NCBI RefSeq assembly: GCF_902713615.1
Contig: NC_052157.1
Location: forward strand, 17,408,566-17,472,565
DNA: 64,000 nt
Direction: 5' to 3'
Origin: Scyliorhinus canicula
Lineage: Eukaryota
The notes below the pieces were generated by a model. That model was not told where the DNA came from and made no database searches. It saw nothing but the letters and a program-made list of their open reading frames with translations. Below are positions 3,017 through 47,313 of the stretch, piece after piece (position 1 is the first letter of the stretch; every line of letters begins with the position of its first letter). Position numbers and translations under genes: made by a program.

Positions 3017-3384
3017 AACAATACAATCTTTTTTGAGCACCTTAAACAACATTCATTGACATTCCACTATCCACGATTTTCATTACCTCAACAAATCCAA
3101 GCAGCTTTGTCAGTGTGACTTTGTCTTTAGAAATCTATGCTGGTTCTCACGGATCAGCTGGAAGTTGGAAAGGCGTCTGTCACACTCTCTTTAATAAGGG
3201 ACGTTAGTAATTGTCCTGTAAACTTCCCGAGTATACTTTTCTGGTTTCCCTCTCTCACCTTTCTTATGCCATTTCCAATCTAAAAGAACGGTTCCTGAAA
3301 AAAGAGAACTTTGGAAGGTTGTAGTTAGGACGTCTGCACACAGAAGTTAAAAACATAGGTGTAAATCACACCCCAGTCTGTGTA

Positions 3385-3600
3385 TTCACTTAACTTGTAG
3401 CTTATAATTTTTCTTCTCAAGTGATTATAATCATCCACTTACTAATGAGGACCAACCAAATGCTGTAGCAAATCTTGTATTCTGCAGTCGGTGAGATATG
3501 AACAAATGTAAGAGTATTGTACTTTAATCCAACGAACAGTCCAAAGTCTAAGTCCGTTTCTGATTGTGTAACATTCTGTTTAATAATTGTGTAAGTTGTC
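3385..3600 (-). promoter_or_regulatory. Putative UGT promoter and non-coding exon 1 (copy 1), for a paralogue off the left edge
   Basis: GTAAGT donor at 3442-3437; DR1/HNF4-like AGTCCAAAGTCTA at 3538-3550; homologous to modules at 44.1 kb and 59.9 kb. Confidence 0.55.
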
Positions 3601-3783
3601 AAGTGACCTGTTACTCATGTTTTGCGATGATGTTTCTTTTGGCATGGAAAACATATAATCCAAGTGGTCCTTTCCACCTGAGTCCTCACTGACTTGAGAA
3701 TTAAACCATGGAATTTAATTTCCAGAATGGTCCATTTTCATTGGAAGTGCAATGCAGATTAACAGTGCAAGGGCAAAACTCTT

Positions 3784-10072: not shown

Positions 10073-11683
10073 TCACTGAATCTTTTGTTTCTTCTTCCGA
10101 GCAATGGTACAAAGTCTGTTCAACAATAGAACTGTCAGCACTGTAACCATTAGGACCAGAGACAGCAGGAAAATCATCACATCTACACAATAGTAAGCAT
10201 ACCAGGGGAGTCGGTAAGATTCTGAGCGTAAATGTGCTGCACCTTTGTGTCGAGCAACATACTCAATCCAGAAAATGGCTCTCTCCATTGGAGAGTCTGG
10301 TTGATCCCTGTGGAGAGCAGAGAGTTTCTGCATGTTATCCCGATAAGACGTGTTGTTTATGACTTCGTGAAGTGCTTGCAAGAGATCTATTGGCTGCATG
10401 GCTGCGACATTAATCACTTTGGCTGCCCCTCGGGTTTCAAGTCTGAGTAAATTGTCAAACTGATCATAAAGCAGAGGGATGCCAACTACTGGCACCCCGT
10501 GATAGATGGCTTCATAAACTCCATTGGTGCCACCATGGGTAATGAATGCTCGTGTCTTGGGGTGCCCTAGAAGGTCATTCTGAGGGATCCATTTTGCTAG
10601 TAGCGTATTATTTCCTACGTTGGGAGGAATCTTTCCATCGTGTCTCCAAATAACTTTCTGAGGTACTTGAGCAAAGGCCTCTGCTATTTTCATTGTAATA
10701 TGCAATGGCAAAGAGCTGATAATGGTCCCCAGAGACATCACAATAATCCCATGTTCCCCTGAGGATTGGACAAACTCTTCAAACTCTGCTGCTAGAGGTT
10801 TGGATGGTTTACACTGGAATCCCCCAATGTAAACAATGTTTGGCATGGTGGGTCTCGGGAATTCAAATATAAAATCAACTCTCATCAGCCACACATCTGC
10901 TCTGAGGAGAATCGTCTCGATATCTGTGTCTGGGCCTAAATACTGATGGCAGAGTTCATTGTAAATGGGCTGAATAATAAATCTTGAAGCAGATAGTTGA
11001 AAAAGATTTAAGATGACATTTAGTGTTCTTTGTAGAAAACTCATTTTGTCTGTAAATTGAGATCCGATGATTGGGATATAGGAAGGTGGCGATGGGGCAG
11101 AGAGGAAATGAGCTTCCCCACTGATGAACCATCGAACATTATACACCAAAGGGAGTTTTAAATAATAAGCAAGGATTGGACCTGTGCCAAAAGCAGGATC
11201 AGTAAGTAGCAAGTCAAATTTTGCATCTTCAAGTTGCCTCAGCACTCCTTCAGTATTGAAAATTGCAATGGTGAACTCTCTAGCACAAGCGTGGTGTGAA
11301 TACATAGCAGACCATTTCTCATGTTCTTGCTGAACGAAGACCCATGGCATCAGACCATTGTTTAAGGCTGCCAATTTGTTTTGTAGATATCTTTGTATTA
11401 CTTTTTCAGTTTCATTCTTGCCAAGGCATTTTTGCATTTGAACCACAATGGATCGATAGAGATCAGACCTCTCCTTGGTGTACCAAGCTTCTGAGGAATG
11501 AACCACGGTGATACTGTGTCCATGAAGTTTCAGTCCTTCTATTAGAATTCTCATATTGATCCAGTGACTTCCATCAACAGGAACAACCAATATATTAGCC
11601 CCCTCGGTAATAGGACAAGACAGGGTGATGATGGTAAGGATACAAGCAGCCAGTAATTGACTTCTCCATCCAGAAGGCTCCAT
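10073..11683 (-). CDS. UDP-glucuronosyltransferase, single coding exon, UGT5-like (UGT2-related), 536 aa, intact
   Basis: Signal peptide, PVDGSHW with catalytic His, LLTDP, UDPGT signature WIPQNDLLGHPKTRAFITHGGTNGVYEAIYHGVPVVGIPLLYDQ, C-terminal TM helix and KKKQKIQ tail; ATG 11683 chosen because a splice acceptor conserved with the paralogue lies 25 nt upstream. Confidence 0.95.
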   Translation of the reverse strand: MEPSGWRSQLLAACILTIITLSCPITEGANILVVPVDGSHWINMRILIEGLKLHGHSITVVHSSEAWYTKERSDLYRSIVVQMQKCLGKNETEKVIQRYLQNKLAALNNGLMPWVFVQQEHEKWSAMYSHHACAREFTIAIFNTEGVLRQLEDAKFDLLLTDPAFGTGPILAYYLKLPLVYNVRWFISGEAHFLSAPSPPSYIPIIGSQFTDKMSFLQRTLNVILNLFQLSASRFIIQPIYNELCHQYLGPDTDIETILLRADVWLMRVDFIFEFPRPTMPNIVYIGGFQCKPSKPLAAEFEEFVQSSGEHGIIVMSLGTIISSLPLHITMKIAEAFAQVPQKVIWRHDGKIPPNVGNNTLLAKWIPQNDLLGHPKTRAFITHGGTNGVYEAIYHGVPVVGIPLLYDQFDNLLRLETRGAAKVINVAAMQPIDLLQALHEVINNTSYRDNMQKLSALHRDQPDSPMERAIFWIEYVARHKGAAHLRSESYRLPWYAYYCVDVMIFLLSLVLMVTVLTVLLLNRLCTIARKKKQKIQ

Positions 11684-29380: not shown

Positions 29381-30150
29381 AGAGAGCGACCACCACCTCT
29401 ATTGGATCTCAGTGCCACGGGTGATGCCCATTCAGGTGATGGTCCAGATCAACAATTTCCCCAGCTGCGGAGCTACACCCTTCAGCCAAGGGCCCCATGG
29501 GACATACATTCCCCGGCCCAAGTGTGGGCCTGGCACGGGAGACCTTTCGGGGAGTTGGAGTATTACAGTAGGCAAATCATCAAAGAAGACAAACAAATCA
29601 TCGAGAAGCATTTCTTTATTAATACCTGTGATCATATAATTGACAGCATTTTAAAATCAGTTAACATAAGCAAATTTTTTCTGTTCGAGAAATATGACCA
29701 TTTAACCGTGATGATCCCGTGTGTTTCTAGATCTAACCAATAATGAAAAACTGATGGTGAACGTTGTGGTGATCACAAGTTAACCAGATGCAACACAACA
29801 GAGCAACCACTAGAGGGAGCACGGGAGAGCCATATAAATAGAAATAGGACAGGAAGTGAGGACACACTTCACTGAGGGCAGAACTTGGAGCAACACATAT
29901 ACACAACACACACTTCACAGCAGGCGGGCTGGTAAGCAGGACACACACAGCAAGCAAAGCTGGTAGTTAGCACTGGAAGGTCGTTCTAGGTCGAGCTCTG
30001 GAAACTGAACGAACTCACAATAAAGCATCTTCTCCACACTTGAGACTACGAGCTTTATTAAGACACGAGTAACAACACATGGTACCCAGGAGTGATTTCA
30101 GACGCTTATGACAGGACAACTCAGCTGCAGATACAGAAAACAAAAAAAAA

Positions 30151-43840: not shown

Positions 43841-44029
43841 AAAGAATTTGCTCTTGCACTACTAATCTGCATTGCACTTTCAGTGAAAGTGGACCATTGT
43901 GGAATTCAGAATCCATGGGTTAATTCTCAAGTCAGTGAGGACTCAGGGGGAAAGGACCACTTAGATTATATGTTTTCCATGCCAAAAGAACTATCATCGC
44001 AAAACATGAGTAACAGGTCACTTGACAAC

Positions 44030-44245
44030 TTACACAATGATTAAACAGAATGTTACACAATCAGAAACGGACTTAGACTTTGGCCTGCCTGATGGATTAA
44101 AGTACAATACTCTTACATTTGTTCATATCTCACCGACTGCCGAATATAAGATTTGCTACAGCGTTTGGTTCGTCTTTATTTGTAAGTGGAAAATTTTCAT
44201 CTCGTGACGAGAAAATTGTAAACTACAAGTTAAAAGTAATCTTTT
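44030..44245 (+). promoter_or_regulatory. Putative promoter and non-coding exon 1 of the plus-strand UGT (copy 2)
   Basis: GTAAGT donor 44182-44187; DR1-like TAGACTTTGGCCT 44074-44086; acceptor TTCTCCAACAG ending 45676 gives a ~1.5-kb 5'UTR intron. Confidence 0.6.
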
Positions 44246-44289
44246 GGCCCTAAAGTGAATAGACAGACTGAGGTGTGATTTTCACCTAT

Positions 44290-45010
44290 GTTTTTATCTT
44301 CTGTGTGCAGACGTCCTAACTACAACCTTCCAAAGTTCTCTTGTTTCAGGAACCGTTCTTTTAGATTGGAAATGGCATAAGAAAGATGAGCGAGGGAAAC
44401 CAGAAAAGTATACTCGGGAAGTTTACAGGAAAATTACTAATGTCCCTTATTAAAGAGAGTGTGACAGACGCCTTTCCAACTTCCAGCTGATCCGTGAGAA
44501 CCAGCATAGATTTCTAAAGGCAAAGTCACACTGACAAAGCTGCTTGGATTTGTTGAGGAGGTAATGAAAATCGTGGATAGTGGAATGTCAATGAATGTTG
44601 TTTAAGGTGCTCAAAAAAGAATAGCTAATCTTGCTGTGAAGCAACACTGCTACCCACTGTGCTACTGTGCCGCCTACATTTACAGTTCATGGAACTGAAA
44701 GCAAATTATTGACTTTGTTCAGAAGTTGGCTGAGCAGCAAGAGATACAGAGCAGTGAAACGGGGCAGGTATCTAATTGCCATGGCTTCTGTGTTGGTGTC
44801 GCAACCATTCGCTGTATTTCTAAATGACTGAAATAGCAGGAGAGTGTGAGAGAGTGAGAGAGAGAGAGATGCCCAAATTTGCTGATGGCACAAAAGTAGA
44901 TAGCATTGTAAAAAGTGTAAATGGAAATTTTAAAATGACACAGATATGTGCATACATTAAACTGTGGCAGATGGATTTCAATGTCGGCAAGTGTGAGGCC
45001 AAACACTTTG
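44290..45010 (+). mobile_element. Ancient CR1 RT fragment in the predicted intron
   Basis: ENQHRFLKGKVTLTKLLGFVEEV, KFADGTKV, WQMDFNVGKCE. Confidence 0.7.
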
Positions 45011-45311
45011 GAGCCGTTTCTCACGGCGACCGGCGATTCTCCGACCCGGATGGGCCGAGCGGCCTGCCGAACCCGACCGGTTCACGCCGGCGCCAACCAC
45101 ACCTGGCCGCTGCCGGTGTGAACAACGCACGTTTCTCACGTAATGTAAGACTACTTGTGACATTAATAAAGATTATATAGAGGGTACCCCAATGATGTGC
45201 TGGGGAATCCATCCAGACCCAATGGGGGACCCTGTACATACAGACGAGCCACCCAGGGGATCCACCACACCATCCCCAACCTGACATGACCACTCCTGCA
45301 AGGCTCGACCG

Positions 45312-45348
<37 letters not shown>

Positions 45349-45701
45349 CCAACCTGACCATCCCCTTGCCAGCCCGAACTGATCCCCCGCCCGCCTGCTA
45401 ACCTGGCCCGATCCCACCAGCCATACCCCCGCCGGTTCAACCCGACTTCCCAGGTCCAGCCTAACTGACCTGCTCCCCAGCCTGAACCGATCCATGTAGG
45501 CCCGAACCAACCACCCCGCTGTTCTGGTCCGACCCGCCCTCCAGTCTGACCCCCTCCAGCTCCGACCCTACCTGCCCACTCCGATCTGACCCGCTTCTCA
45601 ATGGGTTATGCCTGCTCCTTTTTTTACATGTTATTTTACCAAATTTATGCTCTATTTCTCTCAAATTCTCCAACAGAGTCTCAATACCATTTACTCTCAG
45701 A

Positions 45702-47313
45702 ATGAAGTGTTTTGGATGGAAATATCAGTTCCAGGTTGCATTCTCCCTTGGTATCATCATCACCCTGTCTTGTCCCATTACCCAAGGGGCTAATATTTTG
45801 GTTGTGCCTATCGAGGGTAGCCACTGGATCAATATGAGAATCTTAATAGAAGAACTGAGACTTCGTGGACATGACATCACTGTGCTTTTTTACTCAACAT
45901 CTTGGTACATCAAAGAGAGTCCTGATCTCTATCAGTCCATTGTGGTTGAAATGCAAGGATTCCTTGGGAAAAATTCAGATGAAGAATTTATACAGAGTCT
46001 TGTAGAAAATACACTTGGAGTCTTCCAGAAATATGCAACACCATGGACTTTCGTGAAGTTTCAATATGAAATGGCAACTTTTATGCACAGCTGTCATGCT
46101 TGGGGACGAGAATTTAATATTGCGATTTTTGAAAACAAAACTGTTGAAGAAATTTGAAAATGCCAATTTTGATTTAATACTGACCGATCCATTTTTCACT
46201 ACAGGTGCAATGCTTGGGTATTATTTAAAACTCCCAGTAGTTAACAATGTTCGTTTGCACAGTGGTGGAGAAGCTCATTTACTATCTGCCCCATCGCCAT
46301 TGTCCTATGTCCCAATCACCGGCTCAAGACTGACAGATAAAATGAGTTTTCTACAACGAACACAAAATGTACTCCATTGTATTTTTCAACTATACATTTC
46401 AGAATTTTTCACCTACCCGATATACAATGAACTCTGCCGTCGCTATCTGGGCCCCGACACAGATATTGAGACGATTCTCCTGAGAGCAGATGTGTGGCTG
46501 ATGAGAGTTGATTTTATATTTGAATTCCCGAGACCCACCATGCCAAACATTGTTTACATTGGGGGATTCCAGTGTAAACCATCCAAACCTCTCGCAGCAG
46601 AGTTTGAAGAGTTTGTCCAATCCTCAGGGGATCATGGGATTATTGTGATGTCTCTGGGGGCCATTGTCAGCTCTTTGTCATTGCAAATTACAATGAAAAT
46701 AGCAGAGGCCTTTGCTCAAGTACCTCAGAAAGTTATTTGGAGACACGATGGAAAGATCCCTCCAAACATAGGAAATAATACGCTACTGGCAAAATGGATC
46801 CCCCAGAATGACCTTCTGGGGCACCCCAAGACACGAGCATTCATTTCCCATGGTGGCACCAATGGAGTTTATGAAGCCATCTATCATGGGGTGCCAGTAG
46901 TTGGCATCCCTCTGCTTTTTGATCAGTTTGGCAATTTACTCAGGCTCGAAACCCGAGGGGCAGCCAAAGTGATTAATATCGTAGCCATGCAGTCAACAGA
47001 TTTATTACAGGCACTTAACGAAGTCATAAACAACACATCCTATCGGGATAACATGCAGAAACTCTCTGCTCTCCACAGGGATCAACCAGAGTCTCCAATG
47101 GAGAGAGCCATTTTCTGGATTGAGTATGTTGCTCGACACAAAGGTGCTGCTCATTTACGCTCAGAATCTTACCGACTCCCCTGGTATGTTTACTATTGTG
47201 TGGATGTGATGATCCTCCTATTATCTGTGTTACTAATAATTACAGTGTTGACAGTTCTACTGTTGAAAAAACTTTGTAACATCGCTCGAAAGAAAAAGCA
47301 AAAGATTCAGTAA
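45702..47313 (+). pseudogene. UDP-glucuronosyltransferase paralogue (UGT5-like) with one frameshift near 46140; recent pseudogene, null allele or assembly error
   Basis: ORFs 45702-46157 and 46066-47313 join into a 537-aa UGT collinear with the minus-strand gene if 2 nt are restored; PIEGSHW, ILTDP, full UDPGT signature, TM helix, KKKQKIQ. Confidence 0.9.

What the first reader, a model, noticed from the sequence alone, without database searches (positions are those of the whole stretch)
10190..10940. Constant-domain homogenisation between inverted single-exon UGT paralogues
From YLGPDTDIET to about YCVDVM the two CDSs (10190-10940 minus, 46445-47200 plus) are almost identical even at synonymous sites: I count 4 differences in the first ~200 nt. 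The N-terminal substrate-binding halves differ at many residues, the TM-tail segment is clearly more diverged, and the UTRs align only in patches (seen). Purifying selection does not preserve silent sites, so this points to gene conversion restricted to the UDP-sugar-binding domain. That would give a variable-plus-constant architecture like mammalian UGT1A, which uses shared spliced exons (known), but maintained by recombination among intronless genes (inference).
Basis: partly seen in the sequence, partly recalled or inferred. Interest (0 to 1): 0.75.

Follow-up and report, generated by a model that had tools for sequence, protein, structure and literature searches.

The report
Shared constant domain in shark UGT cluster
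In a catshark cluster of 14 detoxification-enzyme (UGT) genes, the half that binds the sugar donor is kept about 94% alike in all copies by repeated DNA copying between genes, while the substrate-binding halves stay old and different. It is a clear but mechanistically ordinary case of regional gene conversion, and new for vertebrate UGTs.

Summary
Gene A (window 10073-11683, minus) and gene B (45702-47313, plus) differ at 36 of 756 sites inside window 10172-10928 (B 46458-47214), against 232 of 853 sites in the rest of the CDS. Synonymous divergence (dS) is 0.14 in the block, 0.73 in the N-half and 0.59 in the membrane tail.

The pattern is not special to this inverted pair. All 14 genes with a single coding exon in a 350-kb cluster on Scyliorhinus canicula chromosome 12 share the block at 91-97% identity. 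Their N-halves form six lineages that are 69-82% alike.

- **No synonymous constraint:** unlinked paralogues show equal dS in both halves.
- **Normal divergence between species:** block dS is 0.4-0.9.
- **Same pattern elsewhere:** zebra shark and thorny skate show it independently.
- **Trees conflict:** N-halves group by orthologue and blocks by species.
- **Mosaic block:** PHI p=0.001.
- **Recent duplicates:** they differ more in the block than in the N-half.

Corrections:
- B is a transcribed pseudogene with a 2-bp deletion.
- At least B has a 5' noncoding exon.
- The block starts about 45 codons before the donor-binding domain.

The closest precedent is clustered protocadherins. Published work found no prevalent conversion in vertebrate Ugt1 and Ugt2 clusters.

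The parts
10073..11683 (-). Gene A: intact 536-codon UGT open reading frame (ATG 11683-11681, stop 10075-10073), in one coding exon. It belongs to subfamily 'a' and equals locus L001.
   Evidence: ORF. Pfam PF00201 match with E=2e-156. 100% self-match.
10184..10949 (-). Homogenised block in A (CDS nt 735-1500, codons ~246-500). It covers the end of the N-terminal domain, the whole donor-binding domain and the stem up to the TM helix.
   Evidence: Sliding windows. Identity matrices show 91-97% among all 14 cluster genes. dS is 0.09-0.21 here. The maximum chi-square block for A-B is 10928-10172. Human UGT2B C-terminal domains align to residues 283-460.
10076..10183 (-). A's TM helix and cytoplasmic tail, which are subfamily-specific and not homogenised in the catshark.
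   Evidence: Tail identity is 65-83% between subfamilies and 98-99% within subfamily 'a'. A-B dS is 0.59.
10950..11611 (-). A's substrate-binding N-half (codons 25-244). It is an old lineage with orthologues in zebra shark, epaulette shark, skate and rays.
   Evidence: Between-subfamily identity is 69-76% and dS is 0.5-0.8. The orthology group has 98* support in the protein tree and 94-96 in the DNA tree.
45677..47313 (+). Gene B coding exon (ATG at 45702). It belongs to subfamily 'b', sister to L008 and L004. The splice acceptor AG lies at 45675-45676.
   Evidence: Two overlapping ORFs in different frames. N-half is 96% identical to L008 and L004. A contig from run X1 joins at 45677. Sequence.
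46141..46143 (+). Site of B's 2-bp deletion (sisters read CTTTG, B reads CTG). It shifts the frame and gives a stop at 46155-46157.
   Evidence: Alignment with L008 and L004. Unitigs of runs X1 and X3 cover 46113-46194 with no difference and no indel.
46437..47202 (+). Homogenised block in B, the counterpart of A 10949-10184.
   Evidence: Coordinate map. Alignment. Identity matrices.
44111..44181 (+). B's 5' noncoding exon. Only the last 71 nt are seen, and its start is unknown. It is followed by a GTAAGT donor, and the intron runs 44182-45676.
   Evidence: A 71-letter loose end of an X1 contig lies before 45677. Its 30-nt consensus matches 44152-44181 uniquely. Donor sequence.

Best explanation
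The two genes belong to a 350-kb cluster of 14 UGT genes on Scyliorhinus canicula chromosome 12. Each gene has a single coding exon, and the family resembles Ugt5.

An internal tract of about 770 bp in the coding exon (codons ~246-500) is continually overwritten between cluster members by non-allelic (ectopic) gene conversion. Tracts are short, tens to about 200 nt. Exchange is independent of gene orientation and of distance within the cluster. As a result, all copies share one slowly drifting 'constant' donor-binding module that is about 94% alike. The substrate-binding N-halves, and in the catshark also the TM tails, keep lineages that predate the split of carcharhiniform and orectolobiform sharks. 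For subfamily 'a' the lineage predates the shark-ray split.

Shown here:
- The dS pattern along the gene.
- Controls that rule out synonymous constraint.
- Tree incongruence between the two halves.
- Mosaicism inside the block.
- Independent repetition in zebra shark and skate.

Inferred:
- The tract is confined because conversion needs long, near-identical sequence. The block is a continuous stretch under strong protein constraint. It is bounded by two fast-evolving segments (codons ~216-240 and the TM helix) that stop heteroduplex extension.
- Selection probably also removes conversions that blur substrate specificity.
- A simple equilibrium model (paralogue divergence ≈ μ(n-1)/λ, with dS 0.15 and n=14) gives a per-site conversion rate roughly 90 times the mutation rate.
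For: **1. dS along the gene.** A-B dS is 0.73 in the N-half, 0.14 in the block and 0.59 in the tail. All between-subfamily pairs show block dS of 0.14-0.21 against N-half dS of 0.48-0.82.

**2. Control with unlinked paralogues.** The intronless paralogues on other chromosomes (L013, L014) have equal dS in both regions: 0.85/0.84, 0.86/1.07 and 1.40/1.41.

**3. Recent duplicates differ more in the block.** N-half dS is 0.025-0.07 but block dS is 0.09-0.18, so variants were imported after duplication.

**4. Cross-species DNA.** Paralogues within zebra shark have block dS 0.13-0.14 against N-half dS 0.68-0.84. Within skate the figures are 0.09-0.16 against 1.3-1.7. Between species, block dS is 0.40-0.53 (shark-shark) and 0.71-0.93 (shark-skate), whatever the orthology.

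**5. Trees.** N-halves group by orthologue and blocks by species or order. AU tests reject one catshark clade for the N-half (p=1e-7) and reject the 'a' orthology group for the block (p=1e-141).

**6. Mosaicism.** The PHI test gives p=0.001 in the block and 0.13 in the N-half. 44% of informative site pairs are incompatible in the block, against 24% in the N-half. The site matrix shows patches shared across subfamilies and strands. In a runs test, 21 of 91 pairs reach p<0.05 where 4.6 are expected, and 19 of these are between subfamilies.

**7. Internal patch.** The block is flanked on both sides by subfamily-specific sequence. Block divergence does not depend on orientation (6.1% same, 6.5% opposite) or on distance (Mantel p=0.85).

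**8. Boundaries.** They coincide with drops in background conservation, seen against the unlinked paralogues.
Against: - No conversion event is observed directly; everything is inferred from one haploid assembly per species.
- There is no specific GC3 signal of biased gene conversion. Block GC3 is 0.41-0.45 against 0.31-0.36 in the N-half, but the unlinked paralogues show the same offset.
- Individual tracts in the runs test barely survive correction for 91 pairs; the best is p=0.0005.
- The catshark assembly could carry some cross-paralogue polishing noise within the block. Short-read unitigs cannot resolve this, because identical stretches are shared by all copies.
Confidence: 0.9

Rival explanations
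1. Conversion is a private exchange between the two inverted neighbours A and B.
For: A and B lie head to head, 34 kb apart. They share a perfect 110-nt run and only 7 differences in the first 200 nt of the block.
Against: A-B block identity (94.6%) is no higher than for other pairs (91-97%). A is closest to L002 (96.5%) and B to L007 and L002 (95%). The first 200 nt are the most uniform part in all pairs, at 95-98%. A-B is not among the 21 significant pairs in the runs test. There is no effect of orientation or distance.
Confidence: 0.04
2. The block is similar because of constraint on the nucleotide sequence itself (synonymous constraint, an embedded RNA element or a low local mutation rate), not because of exchange.
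For: The block encodes the most conserved part of UGTs. Its dN is low (0.02-0.05) and its dN/dS is 0.15-0.28.
Against: The same block shows dS of 0.84-1.41 against and between the unlinked paralogues. Between species it shows dS of 0.40-0.93, about the same as the N-half of orthologues. Blocks group by species with 100/100 support.
Confidence: 0.02
3. The genes are recent duplicates whose N-halves and tails diverged fast under positive selection.
For: N-half dN/dS is high among recent duplicates, at 0.5-1.3.
Against: N-half synonymous divergence between subfamilies is 0.5-0.8. Each subfamily has orthologues in other sharks, and one has orthologues in rays. The flanks of A and B do not align.
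Confidence: 0.02
4. The pattern is an assembly or polishing artefact, in which reads from paralogues were collapsed or mixed during consensus building.
For: The block is multi-copy and 94% alike, a situation in which short-read polishing can mis-assign reads. Unitig depth in identical stretches is about 15 times that of unique parts.
Against: The same dS and tree pattern appears in two independently assembled species, and at protein level in Pristis, skates, stingrays and carpet sharks. The copies are not collapsed: each has its own pattern across 168 polymorphic sites. B-specific sequence, including the frameshift, is reproduced by unitigs from two studies.
Confidence: 0.03
5. Chimeric genes arose by unequal crossing-over within the coding exon (domain shuffling followed by duplication) rather than by non-reciprocal conversion.
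For: The cluster has clearly been rebuilt by segmental duplication and inversion; the subfamily order is a a b f c | c f b a | b f c d e. In the skate the uniform region runs to the 3' end of the CDS.
Against: In the catshark and zebra shark the block is internal, with subfamily-specific sequence on both sides. That arrangement needs double exchanges. Patches of 50-190 nt are shared between genes on opposite strands. A single crossover between inverted copies would invert the interval rather than transfer a patch.
Confidence: 0.05

Closest known systems
Regional gene conversion in clustered protocadherin variable exons (fugu Pcdh2, zebrafish and human Pcdh; PMC1852091, citing Noonan et al. 2004)
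   Same: Both involve tandem arrays of large single exons. The 5' part stays divergent and orthologous across species. The 3' part is homogenised within a species, including at synonymous sites, and the boundaries are sharp. In both cases phylogenies must be built on the unconverted part.
   Different: The protein family is different: an ER detoxification enzyme rather than a neuronal adhesion receptor. Homogenisation here is looser (about 94% against over 99% in fugu). It spans the whole 14-gene cluster rather than subclusters of neighbours, and it acts across both orientations. There is no GC3 excess specific to the converted part. The converted tract is internal in the sharks, whereas the fugu paper describes the 3' region of the variable exon as homogenised.
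UGT1A-type (and fish Ugt2) variable/constant clusters, in which alternative first exons are spliced to shared exons (PMC1885805, PMC2819257)
   Same: The outcome is similar: many different acceptor-binding N-halves are combined with one common donor-binding C-half. The same catshark genome appears to carry such a cluster as well, on C8 at 41.69-41.81 Mb.
   Different: Here every gene carries its own full ORF and nothing is shared by splicing. The constant part is only about 94% alike rather than identical. It starts about 45 codons earlier than the solved human UGT2B C-terminal domains. In the catshark it excludes the TM tail, which UGT1A shares (the UGT1A point is from my own knowledge). Li & Wu 2007 reported that gene conversion is not prevalent in vertebrate Ugt1 and Ugt2 clusters.
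Ugt5 family of teleosts and amphibians (Huang & Wu 2010, PMC2819257)
   Same: The whole ORF lies in one large exon, there are 5' noncoding exon(s), and the genes occur in tandem clusters. The best bony-fish hit (Thunnus, 53% identity) is also encoded by a single exon.
   Different: That paper reports Ugt5 only in teleosts and amphibians; these genes are in elasmobranchs. I built no tree with named zebrafish Ugt5 sequences. That paper does not report concerted evolution of Ugt5.

Membership tests
Region-restricted concerted evolution by ectopic gene conversion | Synonymous divergence among linked paralogues is much lower in the tract than in the flanking coding sequence. | tested here: met
   Block dS is 0.09-0.21, against 0.48-0.82 in the N-half and 0.59-1.0 or more in the tail. 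The same holds in zebra shark and skate.
Region-restricted concerted evolution by ectopic gene conversion | The same tract evolves at a normal synonymous rate where no exchange is possible, that is, between species and against unlinked copies. | tested here: met
   dS is 0.84-1.41 against and between L013 and L014. Between species it is 0.40-0.93.
Region-restricted concerted evolution by ectopic gene conversion | Phylogenies conflict: the tract groups by species and the flanks group by orthologue. | tested here: met
   AU tests give p=1e-7 and 1e-141.
Region-restricted concerted evolution by ectopic gene conversion | There is a mosaic or recombination signal inside the tract. | tested here: met
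   PHI p=0.001 in the block against 0.13 in the N-half. In the runs test, 21 of 91 pairs reach p<0.05. Site matrix.
Region-restricted concerted evolution by ectopic gene conversion | GC3 is raised in the converted tract (biased gene conversion). | tested here: inconclusive
   GC3 is 0.42 in the block and 0.33 in the N-half. The unlinked, unconverted paralogues show the same offset, 0.46 against 0.36-0.40.
Region-restricted concerted evolution by ectopic gene conversion | Conversion events are observed directly, through polymorphisms shared between paralogues, pedigrees or sperm typing. | not testable with these tools
   Only Logan unitigs were available, and they cannot assign identical stretches to individual copies.
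UDP-glycosyltransferase (Pfam PF00201, GT1) | Full-length match to the UDPGT profile, including the donor-binding domain. | tested here: met
   A matches with E=2e-156 over profile positions 2-495 of 499. B's two pieces match with E=3e-140 and 2e-10. Human UGT2B C-terminal domain structures match with E=1e-61 to 1e-66.
Ugt5 family (Huang & Wu 2010) | The entire ORF lies in one large exon. | tested here: met
   Uninterrupted ORFs of 535-537 codons in 12 cluster genes. The zebra shark and skate gene ranges equal the CDS length.
Ugt5 family (Huang & Wu 2010) | 5' noncoding exon(s) are spliced to the coding exon. | tested here: met
   For B, a contig from run X1 joins 44181 (GTAAGT donor) to 45677 (AG acceptor). 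A has a comparable acceptor-like sequence upstream of its ATG, with no read evidence.
Ugt5 family (Huang & Wu 2010) | The genes fall in the Ugt5 clade, separate from Ugt1 and Ugt2, in a tree with named zebrafish genes. | not tested
Indirect support: the best bony-fish hit is a single-exon gene. The multi-exon UGT loci of the catshark are only 29-55% identical.
UGT1A-type variable/constant locus | Alternative first exons are spliced to one shared set of constant exons. | tested here: not met
   Each cluster gene has its own complete C-terminal coding sequence, contiguous with its N-half.

The most novel reading that the evidence does not exclude
The homogenisation may not be a neutral by-product of tandem repetition. 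It may be selectively maintained and ancient, present in sharks and rays and so possibly older than their split. On this reading it is a recombinational equivalent of the shared constant exons of UGT1. It would keep one donor-binding and oligomerisation module compatible across all isoforms while substrate-binding halves diversify. That would make it a second, independent route to a variable/constant enzyme architecture in the same genome that also has the splicing-based one.
Probability: 0.3. Interest if true: 0.7.

Novelty: new member of a known kind. Interest (0 to 1): 0.55.

Why it matters
- **It contrasts with published work on vertebrate UGTs.** That work concluded that Ugt1 and Ugt2 clusters evolve by birth-and-death, without prevalent gene conversion (PMC1885805). 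Here a UGT cluster shows strong, domain-restricted concerted evolution in at least three elasmobranch lineages.
- **It affects phylogenetics and nomenclature.** Trees of shark and ray UGTs built on full-length sequences will be misleading. Orthology must be read from the N-half alone.
- **It may extend the range of Ugt5-like genes.** UGT clusters with a single coding exon occur in cartilaginous fishes, whereas Ugt5 was described only from teleosts and amphibians (PMC2819257).
- **Pseudogenes share the exchange pool.** B is one, and L019 may be another. They could pass defects to working genes, as CYP21A1P does to CYP21A2 (PMC3843699).
- **It offers a natural comparison.** One genome holds two ways of pairing many acceptor domains with one donor domain: splicing and conversion.

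Tried and rejected
- **GC3 as a sign of biased conversion.** The block is richer in GC3 than the N-half, but so are the unconverted unlinked paralogues, so this gives no support either way.
- **Distance and orientation.** Neither affects block divergence (Mantel rho -0.12, p=0.85).
- **Sturgeon and paddlefish paralogues at protein level.** There was no clear grouping of C-halves by species, so I make no claim outside elasmobranchs.
- **Unitig depth as copy number.** Depth in identical stretches is about 15 times that of unique parts in run X1, but the tool warns that depth is not copy number. I use it only as a remark.
- **Flank alignments within subfamily 'b'.** They stop close to the ATG and the stop codon. 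I could not tell whether this reflects repeat insertions, whole-CDS conversion or retroposition, and I left it open.
- **Papers not held.** Noonan 2004 and Wu 2005 were unavailable. I cite them only through PMC1852091 and PMC1885805.
- **Literature searches.** I found no paper on UGT5 or UGT conversion in sharks. That library does not cover most subscription journals.

Full report
**What is in the window.** Gene A (window 10073-11683, minus strand) is an intact 536-codon UDP-glucuronosyltransferase in one coding exon. It matches Pfam PF00201 with E=2e-156. Gene B (45702-47313, plus strand) is its head-to-head neighbour, 34 kb away. B's frame is broken, with ORFs at 45702-46157 and 46066-47313 in different frames. 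Compared with its sister genes, B lacks 2 bp (CTTTG became CTG at about 46142), which gives a stop at 46155-46157. Unitigs of two public runs from different studies cover 46113-46194 without any difference, so the deletion is probably real. Names attached to near-identical database proteins identify the genome as Scyliorhinus canicula, chromosome 12.

A global alignment shows identity rising abruptly from about 75% to about 95% between A 10950 / B 46436 and A 10175 / B 47210. A two-breakpoint maximum chi-square scan places the block at A 10928-10172 (B 46458-47214). There are 36 differences in 756 sites inside and 232 in 853 outside. Fisher's test of N-half against block gives p=3e-33. Synonymous divergence (dS) for A-B is 0.73 in the N-half, 0.14 in the block and 0.59 in the TM tail. 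The whole block has 39 differences in 768 nt.

**It is a property of the whole cluster, not of this pair.** A six-frame search of the genome found 14 UGT copies with a single coding exon between 17.23 and 17.58 Mb of chromosome 12. It also found unlinked intronless paralogues on four other chromosomes.
- N-halves fall into six lineages: a = A, L002, L003; b = B, L008, L004; c = L005, L010, L006; d = L007; e = L009; f = L011, L012, L019. They are 69-82% identical between lineages.
- The block (CDS nt ~735-1500) is 91-97% identical in every pair, with almost no subfamily structure.
- The TM tail is again subfamily-specific.
- Sliding windows show that between-subfamily identity equals within-subfamily identity across the block. 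The edges are sharp, at nt ~720-750 and ~1490-1510.
- A-B block identity of 94.6% is unremarkable.
- Block divergence does not depend on orientation (6.1% same, 6.5% opposite) or on distance (Mantel p=0.85).

**Constraint and recent duplication are excluded.**
- The unlinked paralogues L013 and L014 have equal dS in both regions (0.85/0.84, 0.86/1.07, 1.40/1.41). The block therefore has no intrinsic synonymous constraint.
- N-half dS between subfamilies is 0.5-0.8, so the subfamilies are old.
- Recent duplicates are more diverged in the block (dS 0.09-0.18) than in the N-half (dS 0.025-0.07) or the tail. The block must have received foreign sequence after the duplications.

- I aligned the catshark genes with 47 other chondrichthyan UGT proteins (46 elasmobranch, plus a Callorhinchus outgroup). 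The N-half tree groups them by orthologue. The 'a' group includes zebra shark, epaulette shark, skate and ray genes, with 98* support.
- The block tree groups them by species or order: all six sawfish genes together, all skates, all stingrays, all carpet sharks, and all 14 catshark genes.
- AU tests reject a single catshark clade for the N-half (p=1e-7). They reject the 'a' orthology group for the block (p=1e-141).
- I fetched DNA for three zebra shark and three thorny skate genes, all with a single coding exon. Within-species block dS is 0.09-0.16 against N-half dS of 0.68-1.7.
- Between species, block dS is 0.40-0.53 (shark-shark) and 0.71-0.93 (shark-skate). It is the same for orthologous and non-orthologous pairs.
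- DNA trees give 96-100 support for N-half orthology groups. For the block, they give 100/100 support for the zebra shark and skate species clades, and a star-like catshark clade.

**Evidence that the mechanism is conversion.**
- The block is mosaic. PHI gives p=0.001, against 0.13 in the N-half. 44% of informative site pairs are incompatible, against 24% in the N-half.
- The site matrix shows patches shared across subfamilies and strands. For example, one motif at nt 1040-1071 occurs in L008 (minus strand) and in L006, L007 and L009 (plus strand). L003 carries an f-type patch at nt 1272-1296 that its sisters lack.
- In a Sawyer-type runs test, 21 of 91 pairs reach p<0.05 where 4.6 are expected. 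Of these, 19 are between subfamilies, and the tracts are 50-190 nt long.
- In both sharks the block is internal, flanked on both sides by lineage-specific sequence. A single unequal crossover cannot produce that arrangement.

**Where the block lies in the protein.** Solved human UGT2B C-terminal domains align to A residues 283-460. The block (codons ~246-500) therefore covers the last ~45 residues of the N-terminal domain and linker, the whole donor-binding domain, and the stem up to the TM helix. Its edges coincide with drops in background conservation, measured against the unlinked paralogues. From this I infer that fast-evolving segments on either side act as homology barriers. The 5' edge is similar in zebra shark and skate (codons ~262-264). 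In the skate, however, the uniform region runs on through the TM helix and tail, so the 3' edge is lineage-specific. The catshark also has a variable patch inside the block (nt 1231-1350), with three sequence types shared across subfamilies. The other two species lack it.

**Gene structure and expression.** A contig from run X1 joins sequence ending at 44181 (GTAAGT donor) to 45677, just after an AG acceptor 25 nt upstream of B's ATG. That run is too small to be genomic at the depth seen, so I infer it is RNA. B is thus transcribed and spliced despite the frameshift. The genes have a single coding exon rather than a single exon, as described for zebrafish Ugt5 (PMC2819257). The best bony-fish hit (Thunnus, 53% identity) is also encoded by one exon. 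I did not build a tree with named Ugt5 genes.

**Comparison with what is known.** Regional gene conversion that homogenises the 3' part of large variable exons, while the 5' part stays orthologous, is well described for clustered protocadherins (PMC1852091, citing Noonan 2004). This is therefore a new member of a known kind. [quoted passage not shown] Ugt5 was reported only from teleosts and amphibians (PMC2819257). I found no paper on this in sharks. The UGT1A comparison is a fair functional analogy, but the defining feature of UGT1A, shared spliced exons, is absent here. Whether the homogenisation is adaptive is untested.

**Limits.** There is one assembly per species and no direct observation of conversion events. 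GC3 gives no specific support. Short-read unitigs cannot assign the identical stretches to individual copies. L019's 1-nt deletion is unverified.

Noticed in passing
window 45702-47313, break at ~46142: Gene B is a pseudogene. A 2-bp deletion relative to sisters L008 and L004 gives a stop at 46155-46157. It is nevertheless transcribed and spliced in run X1. It still takes part in the homogenised pool.
   Followed up: yes
L019 (G000:C12:17370231-17371831, minus strand): A second cluster member, of subfamily 'f', has a 1-nt deletion inside the homogenised block, at about CDS nt 861. It is either a pseudogene or an assembly error, and I did not check it with reads.
   Followed up: partly
G000:C12:17.23-17.58 Mb (window = 17408566-17472565): Cluster order by N-half subfamily and strand is a+ a+ b+ f+ c- c- f- b- a- | b+ f+ c+ d+ e+. 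This looks like a four-gene unit (a-b-f-c) copied about three times, once inverted. The A/B interval in the window is the junction between the inverted copy and the third copy.
   Followed up: partly
window 3027-3712 (minus strand) against 43912-44620: B's upstream region, which includes its 5' noncoding exon, has a 91% identical inverted copy near the left end of the window. It probably belongs to the b-subfamily gene L008, whose CDS lies about 7.8 kb to the left of the window.
   Followed up: partly
window 29574-29660: An 89-nt stretch is 81% identical to A's 3' flank, and tblastn finds no UGT coding sequence nearby. This is weakly consistent with the earlier 'ghost UGT' note s1-243693.
   Followed up: partly
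G000:C8:41686792-41805495: At least seven tandem hits to the UGT N-half (29-31% identity) are followed by single hits to the C-terminal segments (residues 297-344, 366-452 and 445-533), all on the plus strand. This looks like a UGT1-type cluster with variable first exons and shared constant exons, in the same genome.
   Followed up: no
CDS nt 1231-1350 of the cluster genes (A: window ~10334-10453): A catshark-specific variable patch lies inside the otherwise uniform block. It has about three sequence types shared across subfamilies, and it is absent in zebra shark and skate.
   Followed up: partly
L034-L036 (Amblyraja radiata): In the skate the homogenised region extends through the TM helix and most of the cytoplasmic tail (95-98% up to codon ~526), unlike in the two sharks.
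   Followed up: partly
N-halves of recent duplicates (L001/L002/L003, B/L008/L004, L011/L012): dN/dS in the substrate-binding half of recent duplicates is 0.5-1.3, against 0.1-0.3 in the block. This suggests relaxed or diversifying selection on acceptor binding.
   Followed up: no
window 45300-45350: A long poly-C run, and C-rich low-complexity sequence, lie within B's 5' intron.
   Followed up: no
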